Below, piece by piece: positions 3,353-63,181 of a DNA stretch of 64,000 nucleotides. The position numbers were made by a program, and so were the translations under genes. Numbering within the stretch: the stretch's first letter is position 1; each line of letters opens with the position of its first letter. The stretch is from Macrostomum lignano (taxonomy: Eukaryota): contig NIVC01002428.1 in NCBI GenBank assembly GCA_002269645.1, positions 110,627 to 174,626 of the forward strand. Reading direction: 5' to 3'. The notes beneath the pieces are model-generated. The model did no database searches, had not been told where the DNA came from, and saw nothing but the letters and a program-made list of their open reading frames with translations.

Positions 3353-16205
<12,853 letters not shown>

Positions 16206-18921: not shown

Positions 18922-18987
18922 GTTCTATTCTTTCCTCCATGTCCTGTACATGATGGCCAATTTTGATTTCAATGTCCGATATCTTCT

Positions 18988-19400
<413 letters not shown>

Positions 19401-21256: not shown

Positions 21257-22048
21257 NNNNNNNNNNNNNNNNNNNNNNNNNNNNNNNNNNNNNNNNNNNN
21301 NNNNNNNNNNNNNNNNNNNNNNNNNNNNNNNNNNNNNNNNNNNNNNNNNNNNNNNNNNNNNNNNNNNNNNNNNNNNNNNNNNNNNNNNNNNNNNNNNNNN
21401 NNNNNNNNNNNNNNNNNNNNNNNNNNNNNNNNNNNNNNNNNNNNNNNNNNNNNNNNNNNNNNNNNNNNNNNNNNNNNNNNNNNNNNNNNNNNNNNNNNNN
21501 NNNNNNNNNNNNNNNNNNNNNNNNNNNNNNNNNNNNNNNNNNNNNNNNNNNNNNNNNNNNNNNNNNNNNNNNNNNNNNNNNNNNNNNNNNNNNNNNNNNN
21601 NNNNNNNNNNNNNNNNNNNNNNNNNNNNNNNNNNNNNNNNNNNNNNNNNNNNNNNNNNNNNNNNNNNNNNNNNNNNNNNNNNNNNNNNNNNNNNNNNNNN
21701 NNNNNNNNNNNNNNNNNNNNNNNNNNNNNNNNNNNNNNNNNNNNNNNNNNNNNNNNNNNNNNNNNNNNNNNNNNNNNNNNNNNNNNNNNNNNNNNNNNNN
21801 NNNNNNNNNNNNNNNNNNNNNNNNNNNNNNNNNNNNNNNNNNNNNNNNNNNNNNNNNNNNNNNNNNNNNNNNNNNNNNNNNNNNNNNNNNNNNNNNNNNN
21901 NNNNNNNNNNNNNNNNNNNNNNNNNNNNNNNNNNNNNNNNNNNNNNNNNNNNNNNNNNNNNNNNNNNNNNNNNNNNNNNNNNNNNNNNNNNNNNNNNNNN
22001 NNNNNNNNNNNNNNNNNNNNNNNNNNNNNNNNNNNNNNNNNNNNNNNN
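21257..22048. other. Assembly gap (792 N)
   Basis: Run of N. Confidence 1.
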
Positions 22049-22328
22049 GAATCCAGCGGCGGGCGCTCACTCCCTGGCCGCCTACGGCTACTCATGGTGC
22101 ACAGGGCGGGCAGGTCGCTGCTGCGTGCGAATGCTCTCAGCCGTCTGCCGCTGCCAGAGAGGCCGAAGGATTCACTGGTGCTAGCGGATGTCGTGCTGCT
22201 CATGGACATGCTGGACGAAGGTCCAATGACGGCACGACACATTCGAGCATGGACAAGGACGGACCCCGTGCTGTCCAAGGTGTTGCGATCAGCCGAGTCC
22301 GGCCAGTGGCCGGCGAGACCGCCTCCGT

Positions 22329-22330
<2 letters not shown>
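22049..22330 (+). pseudogene. Ty3/Gypsy pol fragment (end of RNase H plus tether), frameshifted and truncated by (GATA)n
   Basis: Reads IQRRALT-LAAYGY-MVHRAGRSLLRANALSRLPLP...VLLMDMLDEGPMTARHIRAWTRTDPVLSKVLRSAESGQWP. This matches the Gypsy pattern RIQRWAL.L..Y.Y.I.HR.G.....ADALSRLP ... I...T..DP.L..V....GWP. Confidence 0.8.
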
Positions 22331-23486
<1,156 letters not shown>

Positions 23487-23952
23487 TTAAAACACGAGTA
23501 GTTTATAGTATCGGTGGCAGACAATAAAATTTATAGTAAGGCTGTTGTCAAGCATGGTGGTGTATTTGATTATTGAAAAAACTGGACCTTCTTAGAGTTT
23601 AGCGCAGCTATTCCAGTTCTTGAAATCGTAAACAACTTGATTTATTTTGACGCTCGTAGAAATTTTATAAACAAATTAAAAAAACATTTACGCATTTAAA
23701 CTTTGGTCAAGCCTTTTTCGAAAAAAATTCTGCTAACTGGGGCGGCGAAAACGCGATTAAAGCAGGTGTCAGACCAGTGTATAAACGTGCTGTGTCAGCG
23801 GGATGAAACTTACAGTAGAAATATTGTAGTAAAATGTCTAAATAGTCTGATAAAAATTGGTTTTTGTGGGCTATTTTAGTTTCAACATGAGCAGATGCAG
23901 AGTGCAGAAATGTTGAACGCTCATCATAATTAGTCTCTGCTTTTTCGCTTTG

Positions 23953-26900
23953 CTAATCACGTCCGGGACCTTCAGGCGGCGTGGCTGTCCGGCCTATTGG
24001 TGCCGGGGCCGTCCACTGGTCGTAGAACTGAGCCCTGTCTGCAATGTTGGGAAAAATTGTTTGCTATTATATTTACTAATTATACTGTATTAGTGAATAG
24101 TGACTGTGTCCTTGATCTGACTGTCTTAAGACTCATCGATTTATCATGGCTTGTTTACCAGATTTGGGATATTACAAATGCCAAACATAACAAGAAATAG
24201 AAATAATCTGACATGGGCATGTAGGGCATGTAAAGCGGATGGCTGCTGCACTGGCAGATAGCGCCAATCCTGGAGGCCGGCTGTGGCTGCAGAACGCATT
24301 GGCAAAATGGGAAGCTCTCAGCTTTTGTCATCAATTCTCAATATTTCACCTTCTGAACATCCGAATCGCAAATCGAACAAATCTAAGTTTTGCTCGAGCT
24401 GAGCTCATGAGTTTATTGAGCTAGCTTTTATGAAGTGCTACCTCGCTCACTCACTCACTCACTCACTCACTCACTCACTCACTCACTCACTCACTCACTC
24501 ACTCACTCACTCACTCACTCACTCACTCACTCACTCACTCACTCACTCACTCACTCACTCACTCACTCACTCACTCACTCACTCACTCACTCACTCACTC
24601 ACTCACTCACTCACTCACTCACTCACTCACTCACTCACTCACTCATTCACTCACTCACCCACACTCATTCACTCACTAACTCACTCACTCACTCACTTAC
24701 TCACCCACTCACTCACTCACTCACTCACTCACTCACTCACTCACTTACCCACTCACTCACTCACTCACTCACTCACTCACTCACTCACTCACCCACTCAC
24801 TCACTCACTCACTCACTCACTCACTCACTCACTTTAATCAAACATCAAACAGCAAAGAAGAAAACCTTGCTCGCCTGCATGAAGCAGTACTTTCAGTTCA
24901 AGGCTTTTGAAGCTGGGGAGTAAAAATGAGAAAAATTTCTATTTTTGTTGAACCCAGCAGAACATAAATATAGAAAGAAGAATTGTGATTCCATTCCGGC
25001 ACTATTTTCCATTTGTCCTATTTTCAAACCCAAATTTCGGTGTCGCAGTTCGCTGTTTCTCTGCTTTCAGTAGCAAAAGGAAGAACGCATAGGCTATTTT
25101 ATAGAAGAAAGGCAGCTGGATGACCCGTAAAGAACTTGCTGTCGGTGCAGCAATAAAGAAAATTGTCATTCCAATTCGAAATTGAGCTATGCCTAATAGT
25201 GAAGCTTCCATTCTCAATTGCTGGCTGTGGAAAAAGCAAAAGGTTTTACTTTCAATTTTGAAGCTGTGCATATGTATGGAGATAGATTTTCCTACACATC
25301 TCGTGCTTTGTTTTTAAATTGTAGACATCCGAAAAGGTGCAGCTAGTTTCTAGCGGCTTGCTTGTAACCAAGGTTAAGAAAGAACAATCTAAATCCCCAC
25401 GCTGAGTCCCCAAACCTGGTCCGTACGGCTCCTCAATCCGGTAGTTCGTCTTCAAGTTCAGTTCGTCCCTCAGGCGCCTGGTCTGCACAGCGTAGACCTG
25501 CAGGTTTTAGGAGGGTTTGTGCGGTTTTAGCGGACTTCCCATATCACCCAGTTGCTTAGGAAATAGCTTTTGCGAGCTTCTTCATGTAACTAAAACAAGG
25601 ATTTTAGTTGTCCCCGACTGCTACTTAGTCGGTATAAGCAAAGAAGCACAGCTAATGGGCACAAGCGCTAGTGCAGTATTGCATACAGCAGCATTCAAGT
25701 CGCTTACGATGATAAAGATGACGAGGACAAGCAGGAAAAGTCCGCCAATTACTGCAACCAGAATGATCAGGATGGTGTAATCCTGCGACACGGCCTCTGT
25801 GCCACCGCTTGTGGCTGTGCCGGCACTGGCTGCCGCAGTCGTGGCCGCTGCCCGAGTGGTGGATTCGACGGCCGTTGTCGTTGAGCTGGTACTGGTGAGG
25901 CTTGTGACGGCTGTGAAATTAGGGAACCATTCGAAATTATTTCATATGGTATATACATGTCAAAGGCACAAAAAGCGCTTGCAATTTAAGCTGCTTTGCT
26001 CACCCGAAGATCCAATGTTATCGATGATGACACCACCCAGATCTGTTGCTTTCAAACCTTTTGTGAGAAGCTCGATAATAGAAGCTGCTGTGTTTGTAGA
26101 CGTGTCTCGAACCACAAGGTTTCCACTGATGACAACACTTCCCGACTTAAACTGTAAGTTCACTGCGTTTTGCAGTTCACCATAAAGCGAAGTTGACCTG
26201 GATGATTTCATAACGGTCTCGAAGGCGTAGTTAGCCAGCTGCTTGTAGCGCCAACTGTTCGGGTCTGCATAGTCATCGAACCACTGCAAATTTGAAAAGC
26301 GGAACGAGAACGGCACGGTCTTGACGTTCTTAAACACAGGCTGGTAGTTGGACGGACAGATGCAAGACGTCGTTGTGGGCGCAACAGTCGTAGTTGTAGT
26401 CGGAGTTGTAGTAGTTGTAGTCGTCGTCGTTGTTGTTGTGGTGCTCGTAGTCGAGTAGTTGTGGTAGTAGTCGGAGTAGTTGTGGTAGTAGTCGGAGTAG
26501 TTGTGGTAGTAGTCGGAGTAGTTGTGGTAGTAGTCGGAGTAGTTGTGGTAGTAGTCGGAGTAGTTGTGGTAGTAGTCGGAGTAGTTGTGGTAGTAGTCGG
26601 AGTGGTTGTGGTAGTAGTCGGAGTAGTTGTGGTAGTAGTCGGAGTGGTTGTGGTAGTAGTCGGAGTGGTTGTGGTAGTAGTCGGAGTGGTTGTGGTAGTA
26701 GTTGGAGTGGTTGTGGTAGTAGTCGGAGTGGTTGTGGTAGTAGTCGGAGTGGTTGTGGTAGTAGTCGGAGTGGTTGTGGTAGTAATCGGAGTGGTTGTGG
26801 TAGTAGTCAGAGTGGTTGTGGTAGTAGTCGGAGTGGTTTTGGTAGTCGTCGGAGTGGTTGTCGTAGTAGTTGGAGTGGTTATTGATGTAGTCGTTGTCAA

Positions 26901-29900
26901 ACACACTGCTGGAATTGTCGTAAAGCAGCCGTTGATGATGAGGTACATCTGGAAATTTGTGCTCGTCGCTGAAGCTGTCTTAAGCGTGCGCGGCAAAATG
27001 ATGAACTGAGCTACTGGAAAGCCGATGTCAAAGCACAGATCCGCCGCAGTGTCTGAGGATACCAAGCTAGCAAGATTTTGGAAAGGTGCCGCATAGAACT
27101 GCTTGTATCGAATCGTAGCCTCTCTAACGTTTCCGGAGAGACACAACTAGAATTATGGCAGGGTAGAGCATTTACCGTCAGACTGATGCGTTCTCTGCAC
27201 TGCTTAGAGAAATAAAGCTAAAAAATTTAGAGCTTACCCTGTCAATATAAATTCCACTACGACAGTTATTAATGGTAAGATCCACAGTCAAATATCCATC
27301 CGTTCCGGTGCGAATATTGAAGCCAGTAGCATCACTGAAGCTGGTAGCCCCCGTGATATAGTCCATTGGCAGGAGCAATGGGTTCGAAAGAGCGTTTACC
27401 ATTGGACAGACTGAATAAACAATTTGTTTTTAGCCGTTAGTGTTTAGAATAAACAAACAATTTTGTCTTAACATAAAGGATAGTGCATTTGACTTACACG
27501 TGGTTCCCACAGTCGTAACGGTCGTGGGGGTTTTGGCAGTAGATGAACTGCTAGTCATCGTGCTTGACGTGGTTGTGCTAGTGCTTGTCGTCGTGCTGGT
27601 TGTTGGAGTGCATCCCGGAATCGGCATGAAGCAGCCATACACCGACAGGAAGAAGTTGTAAGTGCTAGATCCGGTGGCTGTAGAAGACTTCAGTTCCTTC
27701 GGTGCGATGATGATAGTGCTCACGTTGAAGTTCAGGTCGTAGCACAGCAGTCCTGGACCGTCTTGAATAATAGTTGTGGACTGAACCAGTGGCAGGTATG
27801 ACTGAGATGCCGATGTCTGGTAGATGAGGTCAGCTCTCTTTACATTGCCGCCGATAAGGCAAACCTAAAAAGTGCAAGGATTTTTCGGTTACAGATTGAA
27901 TCGTTACGCGACTCTAATGACCAATTAAATAAATGCTACAGAGCCTAATTGTACCTGTGTGATGTATTCTGGTCTGCGGCAGTTGTTGGATGTCAAATCG
28001 ATGAAAAGTCCTTCGCCGGGTGCTCTAGACATTGTGTAGCCCAATACAGGAGAGAATGTTGCTCCACTGATGGCCCAGGAAGGCAGCAACGATGTATCAG
28101 CGATCGCATCGACAGCAGGACAAACTAAAAGTAATATTCAAGTTCAGTATACGATAACAAAAAGATTGAAAGAAATTAAGCCAAAGTACGAGCTACTTAC
28201 ATGTTGGCTTTGGTGTAGTAGTTGCTGTCGTAGTTGAACTTGTTGTTGTCGATGTGGTGGAAGCTGTTGAAGTAGTTGGTGTTGTTGTTGCAGTTGACTT
28301 TGTTGTCTCAGTTGTGGAAGCAACTGGTGTTGTAGTTGTAGAAGATGTTGGCAGTGTAGTAGTTTTCGTTGTTGGTGTAGTTGTAGTTGTAGAACTTGTT
28401 GATGTTGACAATGTGCTTGAAGTTGTAGTAGAGGTCGAAGTTTTAGTTGTTGGAGATGTAGTCGATGTGCTGGTTGTCGGAGTCGTCGTTGTTGAGGTCG
28501 TCGTTGTGGGTGTTGTAGTCGTTGTACTCGTTGTCGTTGAAGTCGTGGTTGAAGTTGTCGTTGGAGTAGTAGTTGTGGTGGTAGTCGTTGGAGTCGTGAG
28601 GCAGGCGCCTGTTAGCGGCGTGAAGCAGGCATCGACTCTAACAAAGAAATTGAACATACTGTCGGTCGAGAACGATTTGAGTCGCAGAGGCACAATTGCT
28701 ATTTTAGCTACAGTCTCTTTGTTGAGAACTGTGTAGCACCACGGACTCGTAGTGTCAACTGAGATGCTCGAAGCAGACAAATCAGGCGAGTACTTTTCAG
28801 TGCTTAATCTTGCAAACAGCAAGTTGGCTTCTCGCACGTTACCAATCAGACAAATCTGAAAGAATAAGCGGACATTCCAGTGTATGGAAACATGTGAGGA
28901 AAATATAGTTCAAGACACGTCATAAATGACATACAAACGCGTACCCTATCAACGACTATTGGCGGCCGACATGAGTTTACAGTCAGATCAATCTCAAGGC
29001 TTCCGTTCTTCAGAGGAAGTCTGTAGCCATAGAATGGGTCGTATTCTCCACCAGTTACAGCGAATGAAGGAATCAAGTTGGACTGGTAGAAGCCGTCAAT
29101 AGCGCAAGACGTTGTGGTTTCCAGTGTTGTGGTCAGAGTAGTTCTTGTTGTCGTCGATGTCGTAGTGCTGGTCGTTGGAGTCGTCGTAGTGGTAGTTGTA
29201 GTCGGTGTAGTTGTAGTAGTGCTTGTTGTAACAGTAGTCGGCGTGGTCGGCGTTGTAGTAGTTGTAGTCGTACTGGTAGTGCTGGTGCTGGTCGTTGTGG
29301 TCGGCGTGGTCAGACACGTGGAGTTAAGAGGATTGATGCAGGCCATGAGAGACACGAAGAACTGGTACTCGGTTGAGTTGTAGCCAGGCTTTGTAGCTTG
29401 AGGAACAATCATTAGTTCAGAGGTGAGTCTATTAAGATCATAGCACAGAGGATCTCCAGTTGAAGAAGTCTTTCCTGGCGTGTTGAAGTCGGGTACCAGT
29501 TTGTCGCTGGTTGGCTCTCGGATCAAGATTTGTGCATTGAACACGTTTCCAGCGATGCACAGCTGCAATCACGATCGTTGACGATTAGTTAGATTAATGT
29601 TATATACGAGCGTAGTTACTAAGCGAGTAAGCATATCCATATCGGAAACAGGAATACAACATCTAAACTTTACCCTTGAAATCACAGCAGCGGGTCGGCA
29701 GCCAAAGACAGTAAGATCGATTTTCAATGCGGCTTTGAGGGGAAGAATGTATCCAAAAAGCTCTCTGTATGTGCCACCAGTGACTGCGAATGATGGCAGC
29801 AAGTCCGAACGACTGAAGGCATCAACGAGGCATGCTGAAAATCAAGTAGTCAGTTTGCACAAATGATTAATCGCATCTTGTAAGCTGGGTTTCCAAAGAA

Positions 29901-32900
29901 ACTGGAGAACAAAAACTAAAAAGTTTCTTTTTAAACTTTGTTTTAACTTACAAGTAGTAGTAGTCGGGGTTGTTATTGTAGTTGTTGGAGTCGTCGTCAC
30001 AGTCGTGGTGGGCGTAGTTGTAGTTGTAGTAGTGGTAGGTGTAGTTGTTGTAGTGGAAGTCGAAGAGGTGCTTGTCGATGTTGGCGTTGTTGTAGTTGTA
30101 GATGACGTTGGTAGAGTAGTTGGCGTTGTGGTTGTCGATGATGTCGTTGTGGTTGTTGTAGGAGTTGTTGTTGGCGTTGTAGTTGTTGAAGTTGTGGTCG
30201 GTGTTGTTGTGCTTGTTGTTGTGCTTGTAGTGGGAGTTGTGGGAGTTGTGGTAGTAGTAGTGGCTGTAGTCGTTGTGGTTGTGGTTGTTGGTGTTGTTTG
30301 GCATGTGTCGTTAAGCGGCAAGAAGCAAGCTTGTATAGTCAAGAAAAACTGATAGTTCACTGCAGGAGCTTGAAGAGCAGTAGGCTTGACTTGGAGCTCG
30401 ACCATGTCGATGTTCAAATTGTAGCATAGTTGAGAACTACTAGTTTCATAGTTTATTGAGTCGGCGAAGATAACCGGATAGTCGGAATATGTTCTTCGAT
30501 AAACCACGTTTGATCTTTTCACATTTCCTCCTATCAAGCAAACCTGAAATGTTCCAAGCGTTTTAAACGGAGTATCTGAAGACAAAATTCTCGTAGTCTA
30601 TAGTAAGCACACTGCTTAGCTGTTAAAACTACTACATCATTCGTAGAAAAGACTTTTGACTCAGAAACAAAAAATATTCAAATAGTTTTACGTGATAAAC
30701 TGTTTAGGTTTGCTCTCAACACTAACTGTCGAACAAAAACTATAAGAGTTTAACTATAGTTTAACTAAACTATAAAGTAGTACTTTGTACTAATTGCTTA
30801 ATAGTACTACAAGGGTGTTCAAAACGTCTTAGGACGTTTTCTCATTACTGTTGGGCTGCGCCCTTCCAGTGCTTGTGTACTTTGTCTTGTTTTCATTTTT
30901 TCAGGCCGCCCCGCCCCGTCCCCCGTCTCGCGCCCGGGCCAGGGTTTGTGAGAGGCGTAAGCCTCAACCCTGGCCTCGCCCTTTCTGCACCCAGCCCCCG
31001 GCCCAACTTCTGTCCAATCTGGTTGCTGACCCTACCCCCTCCCTCTTTGCCCGCCTCACCCTAGGGCTGCTCGTATTGGCTGGCTGGCTGATAAGCCGGC
31101 TGGGCCCCAGGGTTTGGCTCGCCCTCTCCATTCTGCCCTACCCCTCCCCTTTTTGTGTAAATATTATGTAAAGGCTAGCCCTGAGCGGGCTGCGCTCCAC
31201 GCTTTTCGTTCTTTCTGATTTTCCGTTCTTCGGCGTACCTCTGCCATTTGCGTACCAATAACTGCTTCGTGCCAATAACTGCTTTTTACCAATAAACGTT
31301 CCGCCAATTCTAACGCTTCGTTAATAAGTCGATACATCAAGAAGAGGTGAGCGCGTGCTTTCTTCTTTCGGGTTGCCGCGTAGGGCCGGATCTGCAGGGA
31401 CCGGGACCGGTGAACACTCGCTGATCCCAGGGTCGTCGGAGTAGCCAGGGAAGGGCTGGGACCGGGGTGTCTCAGGCGGGAGGGCCCGAACCATGACCCG
31501 TCCAGTGGCCATTAGGCCGAGACACAACATTACTCTTTTTAACAGTCAGCAATAGTACTCCTTGCTTGGCACATCTTTCGTTACTCTGTAATATACGTAC
31601 CTGATAAACAGTCAAGGCTCCCCGGCATCCACGAGCTGTGAGGTCAATCGCTATGTATCCACCGCTGGAAACTGGAATGTTCCAGCCAGTAGCGCCGTCA
31701 AACGTCGCACCAGTGATCGTAAATTGCGGCAAGTACACAGGACTCGATAAACCATTAACGACGGGACAAACTGTAATGACAACGTGAAAATGTCTTATTT
31801 ATTAAGTTATTAATACACTACTTCTCGAATACAGCTCTCAATAACAATTGGGCACTTAAAAGAATCATGTAACGATCTTATTTACTTGTTGTGGGCACTG
31901 TTGTAGTACTTGTACTTGTCAGAGTAGTTGTAGTGGTAGTGGTCGACGTTGTCGGTGTAGTTGTTGTGGTTGTTGTGGGTGTTGTAGTTGTTGTAGTGGT
32001 CGTTGTTGTCGGAGTTGTCAAGCAGGTATTATTCAAAGGTGTGAAGCAAGCCTTGATTGTGATGTAAGCTCGAAATGCCGTGTCGGAGCTGAAAGCGCTC
32101 TTCAACTGTTGCGGTGAGATGCGCACACCAGTGAGCATCATTCCTGTAGGCGGAGTGAAGCACAACGGATCGGAAACCCCAGTAGCTGACTGGCTTGCAG
32201 ACGGAAGATTCGGACTGAATGGTCCTCCGTATGTAGTTTGATACAGGATGTAGGAACTCTGAATGTTTCCTAGTAGACAAATCTGCAAAAACCGTTGTGT
32301 GGTACACAATGTGTATTGTCTAGTGGTATGTCTGAAATTATTAGCAAAGTGTCACGTTGTAACGAAATTCCTGCTCAATACTCACGCTCTCAACAGTAAT
32401 TGGCATGCGGCAGCCAAACACGGAGATGTCCACTGTCATTGCGTAGGTACCACCAGTTCGAATCATGTACCCTGAAACAGTGTAATTGGCTCCACTGACT
32501 GCAAATGATGGAATAAAGCGCTCATCCGACAAGCCATCAACTGCACATGAAGGCGTAGTTGTAGTAGCAGTGGTCGTTGTGCTCGTCGTCGTGCTCGTCG
32601 TTGATGTCGACGTGGTGGGTGTAGTTGTCGCTGTTGATGTTGTCGTCGGTGTAGTCGCAGTCGTTGTTGTGCTCGTCGAAGTGGTTGGTGTTGAAGTTGT
32701 CGTTGAGGTAGTCGTCGTAGTACACGATACTGGCAGAGGAGTGAAACAGGCCTCGATGGAAAGGAAAAACTGATACAACGAATCGCCTGAGGCTGCGCTT
32801 TTAAACTCTTTCGGAACAATTCTCAGCTCGGAAATGGGAAGCATTGGGTAGTAGCACAGCGGTGTAGCAGTGTCACTTGTATTGTACAGCGACTGCTCGA

Positions 32901-35900
32901 AGAAGTCCCAGTAGAGGGTGGAGCCTTGACGGATGATAAGATCAGCTCGTTTTACATTACCGCCGAACAGACAAATCTAAAACGGAACGCATCTAATTTT
33001 AGCATTTGAAATTGCTATTTTATTTAAATATCAAGAAAAGAACAAGTTACATACCCTATTAATTAGGATCGGTGTGCGGCAACCGGATACAGAAATGTCC
33101 ACATAGACGCCTTCCACTGAGCCTCTGGGTACATTATATCCTGTTAACGGATTATAACTAGGAGCATTGATAGAAGAACTAGGAATCAAGACGCCGTTGA
33201 GTCCGTTCACCAAACAGGATGTTGTTGTCGACGGAGTGGTTGTAGTAGTGCTAGTTGCTGTTGTGGTCGATGTCGGCGTTGTGCTAGTAGTTGTGGGAGT
33301 TGTTGTTGTGGATGAAGTAGTCGACGTTGTAGAAGTCGTCGTTGTCGACGTCGTTACAGGTTGAGTTTGACAGGCTGTAGTTAGAGGCGCGAAACAGCCC
33401 TCAAGGCTCAGGAAGAATAAATAATTCGTTTCCAGCGACGAGCTGTTCAGTAGTGCGACTGGCGTGATTGCAATGCTAGATATGTTTGCCCCGAGAGTTA
33501 TGCAAAGAGGAGTCAACGAAGACGAGACAGATACCAAATTGGATTCCAAGACAAGATCGAACCGACCGGTCGGATAAGTCGTCTGGGTAGACACCGTTAC
33601 CTGCCTTACATTTCCTGTCACACAAACTCTCGTTAGGTATGTAGGAACAGGATTACATCCTCCAGCAGTCAAATCTATGATAAGATCTCGTCTCGGACTC
33701 ACTGGCATCTCGTATCGACCAGTTACATAAGTGGCGCCGGTAATGGCCCAATCAGGTATGTACTTTCTATCACTAAGGCCATTGAGTGCTGGACAAATTG
33801 TAGGCTTGACAGTAGTTGTAGACGTTGTTGTCGTTGACGTTGTCGTAGGAGTTGTAGTTGTGCTGGTAGTTGTAGGTGTTGTAGTGGTTGTTGAAGTAGT
33901 CGTCGGTGTTGTGGTAGTGCTACTAGTTGTAGTAGGCGTTGTAGTTGTGCTTGTAGTACTCGAAGTTGGAGTGGTTGAAGTGGTAGATGTAGATGTTGAA
34001 GTGGAGGTTGTTGGTGCGACTGTGGTAGACGTCGTCGTTGGAGTTGTAGTGGTAGTAGGAGTAGTCGATGTCGATGTTGTTGGTGTAGTTGTGGTTGACG
34101 TCGTCGTGGGTGTCGTTGTCGTTGACGTCGTCGTGGGTGTCGTTGTTGTGGTGGTGGTTGTTGTAGTCGTAGTAGTGAGACAGCTGGCATTTAAGGCAGT
34201 GAAGCAGCCGTAGATATTCATATAAAATGTGAAATCTGATCCTGTTCCAGGAGTCATTGTCTGTGGCATCAGCTGCAAACCGGTGATGTCTCTGTTCACT
34301 TGAAGACAAAGCAGCCCGTTTCCACCCGTAACGGATGCAGGGAAAAGCACAAGCCTAGAATCCAGATTGTTCTGTACTGAAATCAGAGTCGTTTGCACAT
34401 TTCCACCGAGACAGACGCTAAAAATTCGAATTGGCGCACGACATCCGCGAGCAGAGATATCCACCACAATAGAACCAAGTGGTTGAACAACGAATGCTCC
34501 TGCTCGATTAATAGATGCCCCAGAAATGTCTTGATCTGGTATAAACTGCGCGCTTGTCATTCCGTCGACCACAGGACAGTCTAAAAATCATATTTTTACA
34601 GACAAATGATGATTATAACAAAAAACAATAAAATGAAACGAAAGGTTAGATTTCTATTACTACTAATTCTTACAGGTCGTAGGTGTAGTTGTAGTAGTAG
34701 AAGTTGTTGTCGGTGTCGTCGGAGTAGTGCTTGTCGTTGTGCTGGTTGTCGTTGAAGTAGTTGAAGGCGTGGTTGTAGCTGTACTGGTTGTTGTAGGAGT
34801 TGTAGGGGTTGTTGTTGGTTCTTTTGTTGTTGTTGATGTTGTTGTGCTTGTTGTGCTTGAAGTTGGTGTTGTCGTCGGTGTAGTGGTTGTTGGGGTCGAT
34901 GTCGTCGGTGTTGTTGTGTCGATGTCGTTGGTGTTGTTGTGGTTGATGTTGTTGTTGAGGTTGTGGGAGTAGTTGTAGTTGACGTTGTTGATGTCGTCGT
35001 AGTCGTTGTAAGACAGGACGCGTTTAAGTTGCTGAAGCAGCCATAGATCGATAAGAAGAAGTAGTAGGAACTTGCTGTCGTCTTTAATAGCTGCGGTTCT
35101 ACCTGAACACTGATGACATCTCTGTTTACATCAATGCACAGAATTTCTCCTTCCTTTGCAGTGAGCGTAGCCGAGTCAGGGATCAGGTAGGGAATCACGT
35201 CTGTGTTGAATCGCACCAGAACAAATGCTTGAGCAACGTTTCCAGCTATGCAAACCTAAAATTTAGGTTAGTGTGATATTATAGTCAATGATTGTGTCAG
35301 TTGGCAGAAATGCTGCTTTTTCTTACTCTTAGAACCCGAGTTGCGGGACGACAGCCTCTCGACGAGATGTCGACAATGACAGACGTTCTTTGCTGAAGTG
35401 TAAACGCTCCTGAGACTTGACGAGTGCTGTTACCGAATGTCGCAATGTCGATAGCGGGGATCATCGAAGGGTACAGCATACCATCGACGCTGGGGCAATC
35501 TGCGATTGAGCGCCAGATTTAGGCAATATTAAAATCTTATTTCTTATAGAGTCGATATACAAAGCCAAGTTAACAGGCCTAGTATGGTGTCCTTAAAGCA
35601 TATGTACTAGTCCCTGTAGCGCTACACATTTAAACTAATTAGTTCGTAAAAGAAATAAAGCGTTGGTATGTATTTTTCTTTGCTAGAACTGTTTCTTTTT
35701 TTTAGTTTTTAATTTATTATTCTTGTTTTGTGTTCTTTGAAATTCGTGCGTTGTTGTCGCAAGTACATTTTTTAGTTTGTCAACTGGTTGCTGGTATAGA
35801 ATTTAACATATGCTCGTAATTTATTTAGATCTATTCTCTTGATGAAGAAAAAAACACTTTTATTTAGCAATTGATATCAATTTGATGTTTGTTTTATTAT

Positions 35901-38900
35901 TACTACCAGTCATAGCAAAGCTACTGCAATATCTGATTCTAAGTTAAGGCTAAAGTTAAAGCAACGACATTAGGACTATCTAACCTAGTCAAAAACAATT
36001 TCGCAATCATATCTTATCAAAGGAAGAAGTCAGAAACTAGCAACTCTATCGAAGTTAAGCGGCTATGCCGTAGGCCCCTGCAAAATCGTCAACTAATTTA
36101 AAGTATCTTTATTTCCTTTCTAACAACAAATACAGGCTGCTTGCTGAGAAAACTACATTTTATATGCTTTTAATAGCGTGACTCGGCTATAGGCGATAGG
36201 GTAACAAGAGGTTTCGGTGAATGTGACTTTGGCAAAAGAGGTTTTGGCGACTGGCTGATAAGTTCGTGATGCCTGTTACATAGGTGAATATAATATGCTC
36301 GCATTGTTCAACACTGCAGCTGACCATGCGTGGTCTACAGGTTGCGTGCGTTGGCTGGGATCTTGCAGGTCAGGAGTTCGAATTTTTGTGTACTTTTTTA
36401 GTTTTTGGTGCTGACATATGACTGCAGGTTGCACAACCGATTAGTGGGTGTGGTAATTTTTTGAGTAGCATGTAAGTAGCAAGAAAATTTCAGTGCTACT
36501 AAACCTGTTGTGTATGGATGATCATATTGTTTGTCATTCAATCTGGTCCGAGTCGATCAATAAGTAACCATCTGCTTTTTAGGCTTTCCTTTTCGCTACA
36601 GTTTTAGGCTTTCCTTTTCGCTACAGTTTTAGGCTTGAAGAGATTTAGTGTGCCCTGGGTCTGTACACAGGCATAAACTCGATGGTAGTGTAGGTTTGAG
36701 ATGATCGCTGTTGTTAGCAGTTCAACAAACACAAATCTTATAGTTGACTAACCGCTACAGCGTGATACGTCCCGTTCGATAACTTTAGATACATGTAAAG
36801 CTCAAATGTCTAGAAATCAACTTACAGGTTGTACTCGGGGCTGTTGTAGTCGTACTTGTTGTTGGTGTCGTTGTAGTCGGCTTCGTTGTCGTGGTCGTCG
36901 ACGTTGTTGTTGGAGTTGTTGATGTAGTTGTCGACGTCGACGTCGATGTCGTTGTTGGAGTAGTTGTAGTCGTCGAAGTGGTCGGTGTAGTGGTCGTCGT
37001 CGTTGAAGTCGTAGTCGTAGTCGGAGTCGTAGTAGTTATGGTAGTTGTAGGTGTGGTCGTCGATGTAGTAGTTGACGTAGTAGTCGTTGGCGCAGTGCAA
37101 GTGCTCGGCAGTGGTTCGAAGCAACCCTCAATGGTGACGGAGAACCGGAAGTTTGTCGCAGCCGAATCATAAGACTTTACCAATTGAGGAGCGATTCTCA
37201 CTGCCGATATGTTGAATCCGATCGAGTAGCAAAGCGAGTCAGCCATGGCGTCCCCGGTGGTGGTGAAAGATAGCTCAGAAAAGACCAGATTTGCAGTGAC
37301 GCTTCTTTGCAAACGGATGTTGGCTTGTTTGATGTTTCCGTAAAGACAGATCTGAAATGCACCAGGTTGAGTTATGGTCGGGTATGAGCTACAATCGGAC
37401 TCATCAGACATTTATGGTTATTAATAGTAACTGTCCGTATACCCTCTCAATGTAGACTGGATTTGGTCGGCAGTTTACGGCAGACAAATCAATGTCCATA
37501 AATCCGGACGCGGACCTTGAAATGCTGTATCCAAAGATAGGGTCAGACGAGACTCCGCTGATAGAGTAGGATGGAATGTAGGTATTGCTCGAAAGTCCAT
37601 TTATTAGTGGGCAGACTGAAAAAGTGCGTAGTAGTTGAAGGTCGGTAAGAAAAGTTGAAAAAAAAATACCATCGAAAAATCGCGAAACAAGAAACTTACT
37701 CGTTGGCTTTGGAGTCGTAGTAGTTGTTGTAGTTGTTGTCGGAGTGGTGGTTGTTGGCGGTGTAGTAGTTGTGGATGTTGTTGGTTTGGTGGTTGTCGTT
37801 GACGTTGTAGCAGTCGTTGTGGGAGTGGTTGATGTCGTTGTAGTCGAGGTAGTGGAAGTCGTCGTTGTTGGCGTCGTTGTTGGCGTAGATTGAGTGGTGG
37901 TTGTCGTTGATGGTGTCGTCGTCGTAGTTGTCGTTGGTGATGTCGTCGATGTTGTTGTTGTAGACGTAGTTGTGGTAGGCGTAGTTGTGGTAGGTGAAGT
38001 TGTGGTTGATGTGGTAGTTGGAGTAATTGTTGTTGATGTTGTCAATGTAGTCGATTTGGTGGTAGTAGACGTTGGGGTAGTGGTAGTGCTGGTAGTGCTT
38101 GTAGTTGTTGTTGGCGTTGTCAGACACACTGCGGAAAGCGGCAAGAAGCACGCGTTGATCGTGAGGTAGAACTGGTACTGGGTTTTGTTCGGTGCCGATG
38201 ACTTGAACTCCAATGGAAAAATTCCAATCTTGGCCGCAACTAGTTTAATGTCGTAGCACAGATCTCCAACATCGCTCGATACGGATGCTGATCTCGGCAC
38301 AGGGACGAATGGCCTATCGGATGTTTCACCGTACAAAATGTTGGCCCGTTTTACAGTGCCACTGATACAGATCTGAAAATAACAGTATATAGAATTAAAT
38401 TTTCCACAAATAATAAAAAACGTTTTTTTACTTATATGAGTAACGATTTGATCGACGAACTTACACTTTCAATTAGAATTGGGCTGCGGCAACTTCCCAG
38501 TACCAGGTCAATTTGCATGACGTCATTTTGGTAAACCAGCCAGCCGCGAAGTGGATCATTCGTTGCGTCTGCCACGGCAGTCGTCGGAATGTAGGAGTAG
38601 TCCGACATGCCGTTTACGATGCGACAGTCTAAAATTTTTATGGTTGATTCGTAGGCTTCGCTTCTCATGTCATCAACGGCAGTATCGGATTTTTTTGTTG
38701 AGAAACTGCCACTTGGCTTTAGCGGCCTATTTTTCTAATATAAATTTCTTAGTTCCTAACACTGCACTCACAAGTCGTAGTGGTGGGCGTTGTTGTCGTG
38801 GTGGTTGTCGGCGTTGTGCTGGTGGTTGTGGTGGATGTCGTCGGAGTTGTAGTGGGTGTTGTCGGCGTCGTTGTAGTAGTAGTAGATGTAGTCGTCGGGG

Positions 38901-40573
38901 TCGTAGTAGTGCTGGTAGTGGTAGAAGTTGTAGTGCTTGTGGAGGTAGTTTGGCAGCTGTCATTAACCGGTGTGAAGCAGCCGTCGATGGTGAGGAATAC
39001 CTGGTAGTTGGTGGCCGAGAGGGCTCCGGACTTCAGTGCGACTGGATAAAAGGCAAGCCGAACCATCCTCGTATTCAGCTCATAGCACAGCCTGGCGCCA
39101 GTGACATCAGAAAACAGGGAGCTGGACGGCTCAAATGGGACGTAGCGGCTACTGGTGGTCGGCATGTACTTTACCAAGGCTCGCATCACGTTTCCAGTCA
39201 TGCACAGAGTGTTCACAAAAATTTCAGTAGTTCGACAGCCATCGACAATGAAGTCGAACTCCATCTGATCGTTGAAACTGATCAGAAAATCACCAGACAT
39301 TCCCGGCCGTCCACCGGAGATGGATTTGTCCGGGATGTAAGACTTCTGCGACAGACCGTTCACGTAGTTGCAGACTGAAATTCGCAATATTGAGGGCGTG
39401 TTGGTGATGAAGCTCGAAAGATAACTGATAAAAATTTCGCCAGCAAATAAAAGACATCTTTTTATAAAGAAGTGCCAAACTCACCGGGCGTGGAAGTTGG
39501 CAGTGGCGTCGTCGTAGTTGAAGTCGACGTCGTGCTTGAAGTAGTTGTTGGCGTGGTTGTGGTCACGGTGGTGGTGGGAGTAGTCGGAGTTGGTGTTGTG
39601 AAGAAGTACTTGGTGGTGAGCGGCACGCATGAACAGAAGGGCTCGGCTGTTGTGAAGCCGGCGGCAGGCGTTGCCAGGACGGCCAAAACGGCTACTGCTG
39701 CGGCGATGCCTGTCGAAAGGTGATCGAAAATCAATGTGCTGCTTGTTGAATTTCATTAGCACTCGGCAAGGGGACCGAAGTACCAACAGGCGTTTTAACT
39801 CAGGCAATTTGGTCTAGGTACTCCAATGGTTATATGTGCAGTGTCTCTAAACTTAGTCGTTGCTAGTTACTAAAATGGTGGTCGTGAGTTTGCTAATTAC
39901 CAACCATTCAGTGGTGGTGATTTTCACGCTTTTTTAAAGTAAGTAAACTTGGTCACTTCGTTACCGTTAGTAGTATGTTATTGTCGATTGGACCGTTTGA
40001 ACTCGAAAGTATATTAGGATACCTTTTCTGTGGGAGAAAACTAGAAACGAAGTTATCAAGTCAATAAATTTTTCTCTATGATTCAGAGACCTGTTTTGTG
40101 TACAGAAAAAAGCTTGTCTCCCCCCTACTGATAGTAGTCTTGCTAGAATCATATTTAAATATGTCCATTTTTGGCAGGTAGCTCGTACAACAGTAGCAAA
40201 GATAAACAATCAGCACATCCAGGCCACATAAGCGTAAGTGTAAGTGTAAGCCTTTTCATCATTTTTGTGTAAAATGCAGTACAGAGCTGCATAATTAATG
40301 CGCTCGTATTTGAATGAGTTTTACTCGTGACTACTCATTCCGCATCGATTCCAGTAAAATCAGGCTTTTTATGAGCTCTAACGTACGCTACGATTTTATC
40401 ATCTAGTTGAAAACAAGCATATACCGACCGTGAGCAGCGCTAAAAGCATTTTATTTTTAAGGTCTACCAATTGTTAAAAGTATGAATAGACGGGCCCCTA
40501 AAATAGATAGACGGACTTAAAATAGACGGGCCCTGGACTCACTCAGCATTGCAGGTTGAGCAGAGATGGACAT
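23953..40573 (-). CDS. Giant transmembrane mucin-like protein (~3,360 aa): signal peptide, 13 six-Cys discoidin/F5-8C-like domains separated by Thr/Pro/Ser stalks, SEA domain, TM helix, short cytoplasmic tail
   Basis: 24 exons (minus): 40573-40543, 39709-39485, 39374-38772, 38628-38465, 38372-37700, 37615-37443, 37351-36826, 35499-35327, 35255-34674, 34580-33055, 32975-32386, 32282-31886, 31770-31601, 30543-29952, 29834-29674, 29562-28945, 28855-28201, 28124-27955, 27864-27498, 27410-27238, 27146-26004, 25910-25708, 25497-25416, 24038-23953. All introns are GT-AG with matching phases once three single-base deletions (~34918, ~32951, ~26452) are corrected. Signal peptide MSISAQPAMLSIAAAVAVLAVLATPAAG; TM ILIILVAVIGGLFLLVLVIFIIVYAV then QTRR. 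The first exon and the last two exons are less certain. Confidence 0.85.
24445..24833. repeat. (CACT)n microsatellite in the last intron of the mucin gene
   Basis: Read directly. Confidence 0.97.
26040..26325 (-). other. SEA domain of the mucin with GSVV autoproteolysis motif (26131-26142)
   Basis: KTVPFSFRFSNLQWFDDYADPNSWRYKQLA...LQFKSGSVVISGNLV fits the SEA pattern (F...L.DP.S..Y..L ... F..GSVVV). Confidence 0.8.
26455..26880 (-). repeat. Coding 21-bp VNTR (PTTTTTT heptad, ~20 copies) in the juxta-SEA mucin stalk
   Basis: Plus-strand unit GTAGTAGTCGGAGT(A/G)GTTGTG; translates on the minus strand to (PTTTTTT)n. Confidence 0.92.
30849..31529 (+). mobile_element. Solo LTR (681 bp), probably Gypsy-type, in a mucin intron
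   Basis: Begins TGTTG (30849) and ends CAACA (31529). Flanked by the 4-bp TSD TTAC (30845-30848, 31530-31533). GC-rich compared with the AT-rich host intron. AATAAA at 31291 and a TATA-like tract near 31155. Orientation inferred from these signals. Confidence 0.8.

Positions 40574-48761: not shown

Positions 48762-63181
<14,420 letters not shown>

What the first reader, a model, noticed from the sequence alone, without database searches (positions are those of the whole stretch)
23953..40573. Giant beads-on-a-string membrane mucin with 13 divergent six-cysteine discoidin-like domains plus SEA
Splicing the exons by hand gives a ~3,360-aa type I membrane protein: signal peptide - [globular ~135-aa domain + Thr/Pro stalk] x13 - SEA(GSVV) - TM - short tail. 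Domain consensus: C.xx(N/D)G(L/M)S...(I/L)P...I(S/T)G ... IDL...(G/N)CR.P..I.R(V/I)C(L/I).GNV..A.I.Y ... LCY ... I.I.P..LK ... Y.F.L.I.(G/A)CF.PL...C. Its ends match the F5/8C (discoidin) landmarks C..LGM.SG.I.D..I.ASS and L.LEL.GC (e.g. CPVVDGMTSAQFIPDQDISGAS ... MNIYGCF). It has four extra conserved Cys and lacks the W-x-A and QWLQ motifs, so it may be an undescribed galactose-binding-like subfamily. The copies are very divergent from each other, which could give a multivalent array of different glycan or ligand specificities on a sheddable glycocalyx stalk (mucus, adhesion or microbe-recognition role; inference). The ORF track never shows this architecture because each domain is split by introns.
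Basis: partly seen in the sequence, partly recalled or inferred. Interest (0 to 1): 0.88.

Follow-up and report, generated by a model that had tools for sequence, protein, structure and literature searches.

The report
Giant flatworm mucin with discoidin-like domains
This stretch of the flatworm Macrostomum lignano genome encodes a roughly 3,400-residue cell-surface mucin in which 13 different copies of a previously uncatalogued, distant relative of the discoidin (F5/8 type C) binding domain alternate with sugar-carrying stalks, which is a new twist on known membrane mucins rather than a new kind of molecule.

Summary
On the minus strand (40573 to about 25255) 23 exons with 22 canonical GT-AG introns encode a signal peptide, 13 x [about 140-aa six-Cys domain + Thr/Ser/Pro stalk], a SEA domain with GSVV, a TM helix and a short basic tail. 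The product is 3,387 aa, but only if one base is added at two stalk sites (about 34917 and 26455), which are probably assembly indels.

An HMM finds exactly 13 copies, all in this gene. AlphaFold models the domain confidently (pLDDT 93) as a jelly-roll whose best PDB match is a CBM32 module.

The domain is clearly homologous (hhalign 98%) to a 2-Cys variant in a chiton "mucin-2-like" protein and in an unidentified marine eukaryote. That variant's model matches neuropilin b1, factor V/VIII C and lactadherin C2. The family is therefore a very divergent discoidin/F5-8C offshoot. It fails Pfam PF00754 and the PROSITE signatures, and only 12 credible relatives turned up among 1.84 billion representative proteins.

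A paralog keeps the same domain order, position by position, so the array is old and each position is maintained. Ligand binding is inferred, not shown, and two canonical discoidin binding loops are shortened.

Verdict: a new variant of a known kind, of moderate interest.

The parts
25255..40573 (-). Whole coding span of the membrane mucin gene: 23 exons, 22 GT-AG introns, 3,387 aa after two 1-nt frame corrections
40543..40573 (-). Exon 1: putative start codon, MSISAQPAML. Donor CTGA|GTGAGT, phase 1. Unverified.
   Evidence: sequence read
39485..39709 (-). Exon 2: hydrophobic signal-peptide core (IAAAVAVLAVLATPAAG), the conserved motif EPFCSCVPLTTKYFF, and the first short Thr/Pro stalk
   Evidence: (15/15 identity with paralog P0015)
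38950..39372 (-). Domain D1 (unsplit)
   Evidence: E 3.5e-48; AlphaFold model pLDDT 93
38121..38626 (-). Domain D2 (92-nt phase-0 intron, 38464-38373)
37094..37613 (-). Domain D3 (91-nt phase-0 intron)
35010..35497 (-). Domain D4 (71-nt phase-0 intron); preceded by a 1,326-nt intron
34177..34578 (-). Domain D5 (unsplit; in the 1,526-nt exon 10)
   Evidence: E 1.8e-40
33367..33795 (-). Domain D6 (unsplit; exon 10)
   Evidence: E 3.2e-44
32719..33216 (-). Domain D7 (78-nt phase-0 intron)
32019..32547 (-). Domain D8 (103-nt phase-0 intron)
30298..31768 (-). Domain D9 (1,057-nt phase-0 intron)
29311..29832 (-). Domain D10 (111-nt phase-0 intron)
28598..29106 (-). Domain D11 (89-nt phase-0 intron)
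27607..28122 (-). Domain D12 (90-nt phase-0 intron)
26898..27408 (-). Domain D13 (91-nt phase-0 intron)
26447..26880 (-). Longest stalk: a 21-nt unit repeated 20.7 times, encoding (PTTTTTT)n. The other stalks are degenerate Thr/Ser/Pro runs.
34915..34919 (-). Frame break 1 in the D4 stalk: one base must be inserted to stay in the Thr/Pro frame, and no GT-AG intron is available
26453..26457 (-). Frame break 2 at the end of the D13 repeat array: the unit reads ACTCGACT instead of ACTCCGACT (CC contracted to C)
26008..26367 (-). SEA domain with the GSVV autoproteolysis-type motif, opened by SCICPSNYQPVF
   Evidence: PF01390, E 1.9e-9, 38 bits against 26.4; 55% identity to the paralog's SEA
25708..25910 (-). 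Exon 22: juxtamembrane Ser/Thr/Ala-rich linker and the TM helix (25794-25708 region, ILIILVAVIGGLFLLVLVIFII)
25255..25497 (-). Exon 23: cytoplasmic tail starting VYAVQTRRLRDELNLK. The 3' limit is uncertain because further splicing is not excluded.

Best explanation
The gene encodes a type I, SEA-type transmembrane mucin of the flatworm Macrostomum lignano. After the signal peptide, the ectodomain is a rod about 0.3 micrometres long. In it, 13 compact disulfide-stabilised beta-jelly-roll modules are spaced by stalks that would be densely O-glycosylated.

The modules belong to a lineage-restricted, very divergent offshoot of the discoidin / F5-8 type C / CBM32 family. The flatworm version carries four extra cysteines.

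Next to the membrane, a SEA domain with G|SVV is expected to cleave itself during folding. The large ectodomain would then be held non-covalently and could be shed under mechanical load, as in MUC1, MUC3, MUC12, MUC13 and MUC17.

The 13 modules differ from each other (median 33% identity), but each is kept at its own position in a paralog. The most likely role is therefore a set of non-redundant binding sites, for glycans, proteins or surfaces, displayed at defined heights in the glycocalyx. This resembles a membrane-tethered counterpart of DMBT1/gp-340.

Shown here: the architecture, the fold class, the homology chain and the positional conservation. Inferred: O-glycosylation, SEA cleavage, surface location and ligand binding.
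For: - Architecture. 13 HMM hits in one strand and one gene; 22 consistent GT-AG junctions and a 3,387-aa product; SEA above Pfam threshold with GSVV; TM and basic tail conserved with the paralog; 32% Thr and about 1,113 stalk residues.
- Fold. AlphaFold pLDDT 93, pTM 0.86, eight strands. By Foldseek the best match is CBM32 4a6o (E 1.7e-4, TM 0.62), and other top matches are laminin/netrin LN, IFT25, CBM29, another CBM32 and APC10, all galactose-binding-like jelly-rolls.
- Homology chain. 6-Cys against 2-Cys family: hhalign Prob 98.3%, E 1.7e-14, 129 columns. The 2-Cys model (pLDDT 85) best matches neuropilin b1 (top 11 hits, TM 0.62-0.70, E 5e-5), and also hits factor V, factor VIII C2 and lactadherin C2. 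The merged profile against seven verified F5/8C domains aligns end to end (125 columns, Cys to Cys) with score 25.6, against a maximum of 18.3 in 100 column shuffles and about 10 for reversed sequences. One 2-Cys fragment gives PF00754 E 1.1e-4.
- Positional conservation. All 10 scorable domains of paralog P0015 have their best match at the equivalent position (D1-4, D8-13) at 33-52% identity, with margins of 5-52 bits.
- SEA catalytic Gly-Ser. G-S-V is kept in all three M. lignano paralog groups: GSVV, GSVK and GSVA.
- Same alternation elsewhere. Module and Thr/Pro stalk also alternate in a chiton 'mucin-2-like' protein and in the ENA contigs.
Against: - No expression, splicing or protein data were available.
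- The assembled frame is broken twice.
- The start exon is a prediction.
- Direct profile comparison of the flatworm copies alone with F5/8C is not significant (E 0.14), and Pfam and the PROSITE-type signatures fail. The link to discoidin therefore rests on the fold and on an intermediate family.
- In the profile alignment, the regions that form two of the ligand- or membrane-binding 'spikes' of factor VIII C2 are deleted or shortened. Binding therefore cannot be transferred from discoidin domains, and no sugar-binding residues could be checked.
Confidence: 0.6

Rival explanations
1. The gene is the same, but the globular modules are structural rather than ligand-recognition units. They would be rigid, protease-resistant, disulfide-locked spacers, or homotypic cross-linking knobs that organise or stiffen the glycocalyx or a cuticle-like surface coat. 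Their divergence would reflect relaxed loop constraint, not different specificities.
For: - Two canonical discoidin binding loops are shortened in the profile alignment.
- The conserved positions are mostly core or structural ones: six Cys, P14, D40, G60, N61, P110 and F133.
- The flatworm version has four extra Cys relative to the 2-Cys relatives, which suggests selection for stability.
- The longest variable segment (residues about 71-94 of D1) is coil with lower confidence.
Against: - Each position is individually conserved between paralogs well above the between-position level: 10/10 best hits on the diagonal at 33-52% identity, against a median of 33%. That is not expected if only a generic scaffold were needed.
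- Discoidin, CBM32 and neuropilin-b1 type modules are binding modules in essentially all characterised cases (established knowledge).
Confidence: 0.25
2. The locus is a decaying or non-functional copy (a pseudogene) of a recently multiplied gene. The two frame breaks would be real, and the product would terminate after domain D4.
For: - Without corrections the first stop is at residue 1057.
- M. lignano carries several near-identical copies or alleles: P0003 is about 93% and P0004 about 97% identical to parts of this gene. One copy could therefore decay.
Against: - Both breaks are single-base deficits inside low-complexity stalk repeats, and one is a CC-to-C contraction in an otherwise 96%-regular 21-nt array. 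This is the typical signature of long-read consensus errors.
- Downstream of the breaks, nine further domains, the SEA domain, the TM segment and the tail keep open frames, all six Cys and intact splice sites.
- Gene predictions of the paralogs show similar frame slips in stalks.
Confidence: 0.1
3. The region holds several adjacent genes, or alternative transcripts, each encoding one or a few modules with stalks. These would be secreted mucin-like lectins, and only the last would be membrane-anchored, rather than there being one 3,387-aa protein.
For: - Public predictions for this species are all fragments of 290-1,617 aa.
- There are two long introns (1,326 and 1,057 nt) where transcript breaks could lie.
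- No transcript evidence was available.
Against: - No internal exon has a start codon followed by a signal peptide.
- Every junction keeps phase and frame across the whole span.
- Only one signal peptide and one SEA-TM module exist in the locus.
- The paralog prediction P0015 also runs from the same conserved N-terminus to SEA-TM-tail.
Confidence: 0.08

Closest known systems
F5/8 type C (discoidin) domain, Pfam PF00754, including bacterial CBM32 (galactose-binding domain-like superfamily)
   Same: - It has the same jelly-roll fold. The best PDB matches are CBM32 for the flatworm copy and neuropilin b1, factor V, factor VIII C2 and lactadherin C2 for its 2-Cys relative.
- It is about the same size (roughly 140 aa).
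- A Cys at the N-terminus and a Cys in the terminal 'GC' align with the discoidin disulfide pair.
- The landmarks GM..I.D..I, (L/I).(V/I)DL, V..(V/I)...G and I.I.P are in register in a full-length profile alignment.
   Different: - It fails the Pfam gathering score in all 13 copies and in all 2-Cys copies tested whole.
- It lacks both PROSITE-type signatures.
- The direct profile comparison is insignificant without the intermediate family.
- It has four additional invariant Cys, in GCR, (V/I)C(L/I).GN, LCY and the C-terminal C.
- Two of the binding 'spike' loops are shortened.
SEA-type transmembrane mucins (MUC1, MUC3/12/13/17, MUC16; 'mucin1-like' of sea anemones, PMC9080433)
   Same: It has a signal peptide, Thr/Ser/Pro-rich mucin regions, a membrane-proximal SEA domain with the G|SVV-type site, a single TM segment and a short cytoplasmic tail.
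   Different: - The mucin region is not one long PTS/VNTR block. It is interrupted 13 times by folded Cys-containing modules.
- There are no EGF domains flanking the SEA domain.
- The SEA domain has no detectable match to solved SEA structures by sequence.
- The architecture was probably assembled independently of the vertebrate MUC genes (inference).
DMBT1 / gp-340 / salivary agglutinin
   Same: It is a beads-on-a-string design. About 13 copies of one small disulfide-rich binding domain are separated by short Ser/Thr/Pro linkers, giving a multivalent mucin-like pattern-recognition molecule (established knowledge, recalled, not tested here). It is the best functional analogy.
   Different: - The domain type is different (SRCR rather than discoidin-like).
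- DMBT1 copies are nearly identical to each other, whereas these are only about 33% identical and are position-specific.
- DMBT1 is secreted, with CUB and ZP domains, and has no SEA domain or TM segment.
Lophotrochozoan and arthropod gel-forming mucin-like proteins with F5_F8_type_C domains (hemolectin/hemocytin type; Lang et al. 2016, PMC4948705)
   Same: These combine discoidin-family modules with PTS regions in invertebrate mucin-like proteins. PMC4948705 notes that the F5_F8 domain is characteristic of lophotrochozoan mucin-like proteins.
   Different: Those proteins are secreted VWD-C8-TIL polymers with canonical, Pfam-recognised F5/8C domains. Here there is no VWD, C8 or TIL domain, the protein is membrane-anchored through SEA-TM, and the domain is not recognised by Pfam.
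Liolophura sinensis (chiton) 'mucin-2-like' XP_064614628.1, and unnamed tandem arrays in ENA assembly ERZ25069853
   Same: They carry a homologous domain (E 2.6e-25 for the chiton protein; hhalign 98.3%). The domain alternates with Thr/Pro-rich linkers in the same beads-on-a-string way.
   Different: - They have only the two discoidin-type Cys.
- They have a longer first loop with a conserved RP...W.
- The chiton copies are nearly identical to each other.
- No SEA or TM module was detected in the available prediction.
- Copies are mostly one exon each.

Membership tests
F5/8 type C (discoidin) domain, PF00754 | Scores at or above the Pfam gathering threshold (28.2 bits) against the PF00754 HMM | tested here: not met
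   0 of 13 window copies give any PF00754 hit even at E<=10. 0 of 8 whole 2-Cys copies hit at E<=1. Only fragment P0014 reaches 22.7 bits, E 1.1e-4. Seven reference discoidin domains score 80-117 bits.
F5/8 type C (discoidin) domain, PF00754 | PROSITE FA58C_1 and FA58C_2 signature patterns (patterns recalled from memory; they hit 7/7 and 6/7 of the verified references) | tested here: not met
   0/13 window copies and 0/10 2-Cys copies match either pattern.
F5/8 type C (discoidin) domain, PF00754 | Eight-stranded distorted beta-barrel/jelly-roll fold superposable on solved discoidin/CBM32 domains | tested here: met
   For the D1 model (pLDDT 93) the top Foldseek hit is CBM32 4a6o, E 1.7e-4, TM 0.62. 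For the homologous P0010 model (pLDDT 85) the top 11 hits are neuropilin b1, TM 0.62-0.70, followed by factor V, factor VIII C2 and lactadherin C2. These are predicted structures, not experimental ones.
F5/8 type C (discoidin) domain, PF00754 | Statistically supported sequence-profile homology to the family | tested here: inconclusive
   hhalign of the merged family against 7 F5/8C domains gives score 25.6, E 0.0016, Prob 16%, over 125 columns end to end. This exceeds all 100 column-shuffled controls (max 18.3) and the reversed controls (about 10). The flatworm copies alone give E 0.14.
F5/8 type C (discoidin) domain, PF00754 | Disulfide linking the N-terminal Cys to the C-terminal Cys of '..GC' | tested here: inconclusive
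   C1 and C132 (the GC|F motif) align with the two discoidin Cys, and they are the only two Cys kept in the 2-Cys relatives.
F5/8 type C (discoidin) domain, PF00754 | Protruding loops ('spikes') at one end of the barrel that form the ligand- or membrane-binding site | tested here: inconclusive
   In the profile alignment, the segments matching factor VIII C2 residues about 24-40 and 77-85 are gaps or much shorter in the flatworm domain. No structural superposition was possible.
SEA domain, PF01390 | Scores above the Pfam gathering threshold | tested here: met
   38.0 bits against 26.4, E 1.9e-9, profile positions 3-94 of 106.
SEA domain, PF01390 | G|S(V/I)VV autoproteolysis motif at the expected hairpin | tested here: met
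   The sequence FKSGSVVISGNLVV is present. The paralogs keep GSVK and GSVA.
SEA domain, PF01390 | Actual self-cleavage and non-covalent association of the two chains | not testable with these tools
   This needs expression of the SEA-TM region followed by SDS-PAGE or mass spectrometry.
Transmembrane mucin | Extended Pro/Thr/Ser-rich (PTS) regions | tested here: met
   There are 15 segments with at least 75% T+S+P, totalling 1,113 of 3,387 residues. The protein is 32% Thr overall. One stalk is a 21-nt x 20.7 repeat array.
Transmembrane mucin | Dense O-glycosylation of the PTS regions | not testable with these tools
   This needs lectin or periodic acid-Schiff staining, or glycoproteomics.
Transmembrane mucin | N-terminal signal peptide and a single C-terminal TM helix (type I topology) | tested here: inconclusive
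   The TM segment is clear: 23 hydrophobic residues followed by RRLR, conserved with the paralog. The hydrophobic signal-peptide core is present in exon 2, but its start codon depends on the predicted exon 1. No dedicated signal-peptide or TM predictor was available.

The most novel reading that the evidence does not exclude
The 13 mutually divergent but positionally conserved discoidin-like modules would form an ordered 'barcode' of distinct recognition sites displayed at fixed heights along a sheddable glycocalyx stalk. This would be a membrane-tethered, multi-specific pattern-recognition or adhesion scaffold of flatworms. It would be built from a previously uncatalogued spiralian branch of the discoidin superfamily and would work like DMBT1/gp-340, but with non-redundant sites. 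Ligand engagement or shear could then release the ectodomain at the SEA cleavage site, acting as a decoy.
Probability: 0.25. Interest if true: 0.7.

Novelty: new variant of a known kind. Interest (0 to 1): 0.5.

Why it matters
1. It defines a domain family that current libraries miss. There is no Pfam model, and only 12 credible hits were found among 1.84 billion representative proteins. It also places that family, through fold and an intermediate 2-Cys subfamily, as a far-diverged spiralian branch of the discoidin/F5-8C/CBM32 group. A curated HMM would immediately improve annotation of flatworm and mollusc 'hypothetical' and 'mucin-2-like' proteins, which at present carry misleading automatic names (ZP-, PKD-, REJ- and DUF3707-containing).

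2. It shows a membrane-mucin design not seen in the vertebrate MUC genes: folded binding modules interleaved with the glycosylated stalk, with each position conserved for a long time. That makes a testable prediction of position-specific function.

3. Macrostomum lignano is a transgenic, RNAi-amenable, transparent model. Localisation, knock-down and shedding of such a glycocalyx molecule can therefore be tested directly, which bears on host-microbe interaction, ciliary gliding and adhesion at the body surface or gut.

4. It is a practical warning. The full architecture is invisible to ORF tracks and is fragmented in public gene predictions, because of mid-domain introns and indel errors in the Thr/Pro repeats.

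Tried and rejected
- Single-sequence and per-copy Pfam scans found nothing relevant: all 13 copies at E<=10 and eight 2-Cys copies at E<=1.
- Sequence-profile searches of all PDB chains with the 13-copy and the 23-sequence alignments found nothing beyond a chance pilin hit at E 1.4.
- The SEA region against PDB by phmmer gave no hit.
- The word-indexed search of 5.8 billion proteins found nothing with the 13 copies, and only ENA fragments with the broader alignments. None of those carried Pfam annotation, so the hoped-for annotated bridge family does not exist in that resource.
- Bacterial hits P0011 and P0013 from the exhaustive search were rejected as spurious. Their per-repeat scores are around or below zero to 8 bits on short segments of unrelated repeat proteins.
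- I considered whether the two frame breaks could be short introns. This was rejected because there is no GT...AG and the repeat unit simply lacks one base.
- I considered a spliced-leader or in-exon start for the signal peptide. This was rejected because no in-frame ATG lies between the exon-2 acceptor and the hydrophobic core.
- I considered a conserved mid-domain intron shared with the 2-Cys relatives. This was rejected: the one split copy seen (P0014) breaks three codons away, and most copies are single-exon.
- The plus-strand ORFs across the region (poly-Val/Gly) are mirror images of the ACN-rich stalk codons, not genes.
- The organism behind ENA sample ERZ25069853 could not be identified with the tools at hand.
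- Literature searches for a Macrostomum membrane mucin, a discoidin-like protein or the locus tag Mlig023086 found nothing specific.

Full report
**Source and setting.** The window is eukaryotic. It has GT-AG introns, kilobase microsatellites and one N gap at 21257-22048. Near-identical protein fragments identify it as Macrostomum lignano, a free-living flatworm. P0004 is PAA49141.1 (BOX15_Mlig023086g3), and several UniRef entries are 93-97% identical to parts of the gene.

**Observation.** The minus-strand translation shows globular Cys-containing segments alternating with Thr/Pro runs.
- I extracted 13 units and aligned them (A1). Six Cys are invariant (C1, C46, C57, C96, C132, C140), as are P14, D40, G60 and P110. 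Pairwise identity is 25-44%, median 33%.
- An HMM from these copies, run on the six-frame translation of the whole 64 kb, finds exactly these 13 copies (39372-26898, minus strand) and nothing else. E-values are 1e-13 to 1e-48. The repeat is real and far beyond chance.

**Gene model.** For every gap between coding blocks I enumerated the frame-compatible GT...AG pairs.
- Each of the 22 junctions has a clear best solution with GT(A/G)AGT-like donors and pyrimidine-rich (C/T)AG acceptors.
- Ten domains are split at the same position by a phase-0 intron (..R | (I/V/L)C.GN). D1, D5 and D6 are unsplit.
- The nine domains that begin an exon (D1-D5, D9, D10, D12, D13) follow a phase-1 intron. D6, D7, D8 and D11 follow the preceding stalk without an intron.
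- Several junctions reproduce independent public predictions: PKPT|ICPLING and IER|ICLYGN in P0003, and VES|ICLLGN in P0004.

**Frame breaks.** The frame runs through only if one base is inserted at about 34917 and at about 26455. Otherwise translation stops at residue 1057.
- Both sites lie in stalk repeats with no possible intron. At 26455 a 21-nt unit reads ACTCGACT instead of ACTCCGACT, at the edge of a 20.7-copy array that is 96% regular.
- Nine domains, the SEA domain, the TM segment and the tail downstream are intact. I therefore read these breaks as consensus indels of a long-read assembly, but a real frameshift is not excluded.

**Termini.**
- Exon 2 carries a hydrophobic core (IAAAVAVLAVLATPAAG) with no in-frame ATG. 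The best upstream solution is a 31-nt exon at 40573-40543 (MSISAQPAML, donor CTGA|GTGAGT). This is unverified.
- Directly after the predicted signal peptide lies EPFCSCVPLTTKYFF, which is 15/15 identical in the paralog P0015.
- At the C-terminus, the SEA domain passes Pfam's threshold (38 bits, E 1.9e-9) and contains GSVV.
- It is followed by a Ser/Thr/Ala linker, a 23-residue TM segment, and a tail (VYAVQTRRLRDELNLK) that matches the paralog's tail VYAVYSRRMRSDLKQK.
- I found no evidence for coding sequence down to 23953.

**What the domain is.**
- Pfam does not recognise it in any copy. PDB sequence-profile searches are empty.
- AlphaFold2 with the 13 copies as alignment gives a confident all-beta model (pLDDT 93, pTM 0.86). 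By Foldseek, the best match is the CBM32-4 module of C. perfringens GH89 (E 1.7e-4, TM 0.62). Other top hits are laminin/netrin LN domains, IFT25, CBM29, another CBM32 and APC10, with the DDR1 DS-like domain lower down. This is the galactose-binding-domain-like jelly-roll class, at 5-13% sequence identity.
- An exhaustive HMM search of 1.84 billion representative proteins returns only 14 hits at E<=1e-3. Eight are M. lignano proteins. One is a chiton (Liolophura sinensis) 'mucin-2-like' protein. Three are ENA metagenome-assembly fragments. Two are bacterial repeat proteins that I reject as spurious.
- The chiton and ENA sequences carry a 2-Cys version of the domain, again alternating with Thr/Pro linkers.
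- hhalign links the flatworm 6-Cys and the 2-Cys alignments at Prob 98.3%, E 1.7e-14, over 129 columns.
- The model of the 2-Cys member P0010 (pLDDT 85) matches canonical discoidin domains best. Neuropilin-1/2 b1 fills the top 11 places (E 5e-5 to 1.8e-4, TM 0.62-0.70). Factor V, factor VIII C2, lactadherin C2 and several CBM32s also hit.
- For a sequence-level test I wrote out seven classical F5/8C domains from memory and verified them against Pfam (80-117 bits). The merged 6-Cys plus 2-Cys profile aligns with them end to end, from the first Cys to the terminal GC, over 125 columns. The landmarks GM, I.D..I, R, W, (V/I)DL, V..(V/I)..G and I.I.P are in register.
- That alignment scores 25.6. 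The maximum over 100 column-shuffled controls is 18.3, and reversed controls score about 10. The nominal probability is low (16%), and the flatworm copies alone are not significant (E 0.14).
- One 2-Cys fragment reaches PF00754 at E 1.1e-4, below threshold. PROSITE-type F5/8C signatures are absent from all copies.

Conclusion on the domain: it is a very divergent, lineage-restricted branch of the discoidin/F5-8C/CBM32 group. It is recognisable by fold and through an intermediate family, but not by the family's own sequence definitions. C1 and C132 correspond to the discoidin disulfide pair. The other four Cys are additions found only in the M. lignano copies. In the profile alignment, two loops that form binding 'spikes' in factor VIII C2 are shortened.

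**Evolution of the array.**
- M. lignano has at least two further loci. P0015/P0001/P0002 has the same N-terminal motif, a SEA domain 55% identical, and a TM segment and tail. P0005/P0008/P0009 is more divergent, with four modules, a SEA domain, a TM segment and a longer tail.
- Each of the 10 scorable P0015 modules has its best match at the equivalent position of the window protein (D1-4, D8-13). Identity is 33-52% and margins are 5-52 bits, whereas copies within the protein share a median of 33%.
- The 13-module order therefore predates the split of these paralogs, and each position has been kept distinct. That argues for non-redundant roles.

**How it most likely works.**
- By analogy with SEA-type membrane mucins (established knowledge), the protein enters the secretory pathway and the SEA domain cleaves at G|SVV while folding.
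- The Thr/Ser/Pro stalks, about 1,113 residues, become densely O-glycosylated and extended. This gives a rod of roughly 0.3 micrometres with 13 folded knobs, held at the apical membrane by the non-covalent SEA junction and sheddable under force.
- The knobs, as discoidin-superfamily modules with position-specific sequences, are most plausibly binding sites. This resembles DMBT1/gp-340, which is built from SRCR domains and Ser/Thr/Pro linkers.
- All of this paragraph is inference. No expression, glycosylation, cleavage or binding data could be obtained, and the shortened loops caution against transferring any specific ligand.

**Rival readings.** The rivals are structural spacers or cross-linkers, a pseudogene, or several genes or transcripts. 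They are listed separately with their tests.

**Known context and novelty.**
- SP-PTS-SEA-TM proteins have been described outside vertebrates, as sea anemone 'mucin1-like' (PMC9080433).
- No paper on this M. lignano protein or domain was found.
- The new elements are the uncatalogued domain family and its ordered, interleaved 13-position array on a SEA-anchored mucin. I rate it a new variant of a known kind, with interest about 0.5.

Noticed in passing
window 49591-62170, minus strand: The upstream neighbour is an HIP1/HIP1R-like gene. It has an ANTH domain (60931-61377, E 1e-17), a coiled coil (55363-55800) and an I/LWEQ domain (49591-50193, E 1.9e-39; start of the domain at 50756-51760). It is interrupted by long microsatellite-filled introns.
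   Followed up: partly
window 3997-4413, minus strand: An ORF with 'LTCPAGTRLKIWYAYFGRSFDGTCP' matches the first half of a SUEL / rhamnose-binding lectin domain (PF02140, E 2e-5, 25 bits, below the 31.4 cutoff). It is probably one exon of another lectin-domain gene.
   Followed up: partly
window 39600-39644, minus strand (exon 2): The 15-residue motif EPFCSCVPLTTKYFF, right after the predicted signal peptide, is 100% identical in paralog P0015, while the rest of the proteins are 33-55% identical. A similar CxC motif (SCICPSNYQPVF) opens the SEA module. Its function is unknown; it could be an interchain disulfide or a processing site.
   Followed up: no
window 34915-34919 and 26453-26457: There are two single-base frame breaks inside Thr/Pro stalk repeats, and both need an inserted base. 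They look like long-read consensus deletions, but they could be real.
   Followed up: partly
window 33055-34580 (exon 10); introns 35500-36825 and 30544-31600: The exon structure is uneven. D1, D5 and D6 lack the mid-domain intron, and one 1,526-nt exon holds D5, D6 and half of D7, which suggests intron loss. Two introns are over 1 kb, against 70-140 nt for most others, and may contain inserted repeats. Their content was not examined.
   Followed up: no
window 8777-10383, 17889-18966, 19093-19413, 22289-23524, 24430-24923, 58082-60236; N gap 21257-22048: There are kilobase-scale microsatellite arrays, translating as (SIYL)n and (LTHS)n, on both sides of the gene and in neighbouring introns, plus one assembly gap.
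   Followed up: no
L001, L002, L005, L006, L008 (ENA ERZ25069853); L007 (ERZ23498661, SOLA22-1 marine metagenome): An unidentified marine eukaryote carries long tandem arrays of one-exon copies of the 2-Cys version of the domain, spaced about 1.5-3 kb apart. One copy is preceded by a (TTTATPTPG)n stalk (L002 10849-12207). The organism was not identified.
   Followed up: partly
public entries P0003, P0005, P0006, P0008, P0016 (UniRef, M. lignano): The automatic names 'ZP domain-containing', 'PKD domain-containing', 'REJ domain-containing' and 'DUF3707 domain-containing' do not hold up for the one such entry rescanned (P0005, 'PKD domain-containing'), which gave no PKD hit at E<=1. The other four entries were not rescanned, but they consist of the same discoidin-like modules and low-complexity Thr/Pro sequence, or out-of-frame translations of it.
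   Followed up: partly
P0018 (JGI/IMG metagenome, 57 aa): A fragment in the same 90%-identity cluster as the M. lignano protein P0003 occurs on two JGI metagenome contigs. This suggests Macrostomum-like DNA in an environmental sample.
   Followed up: no
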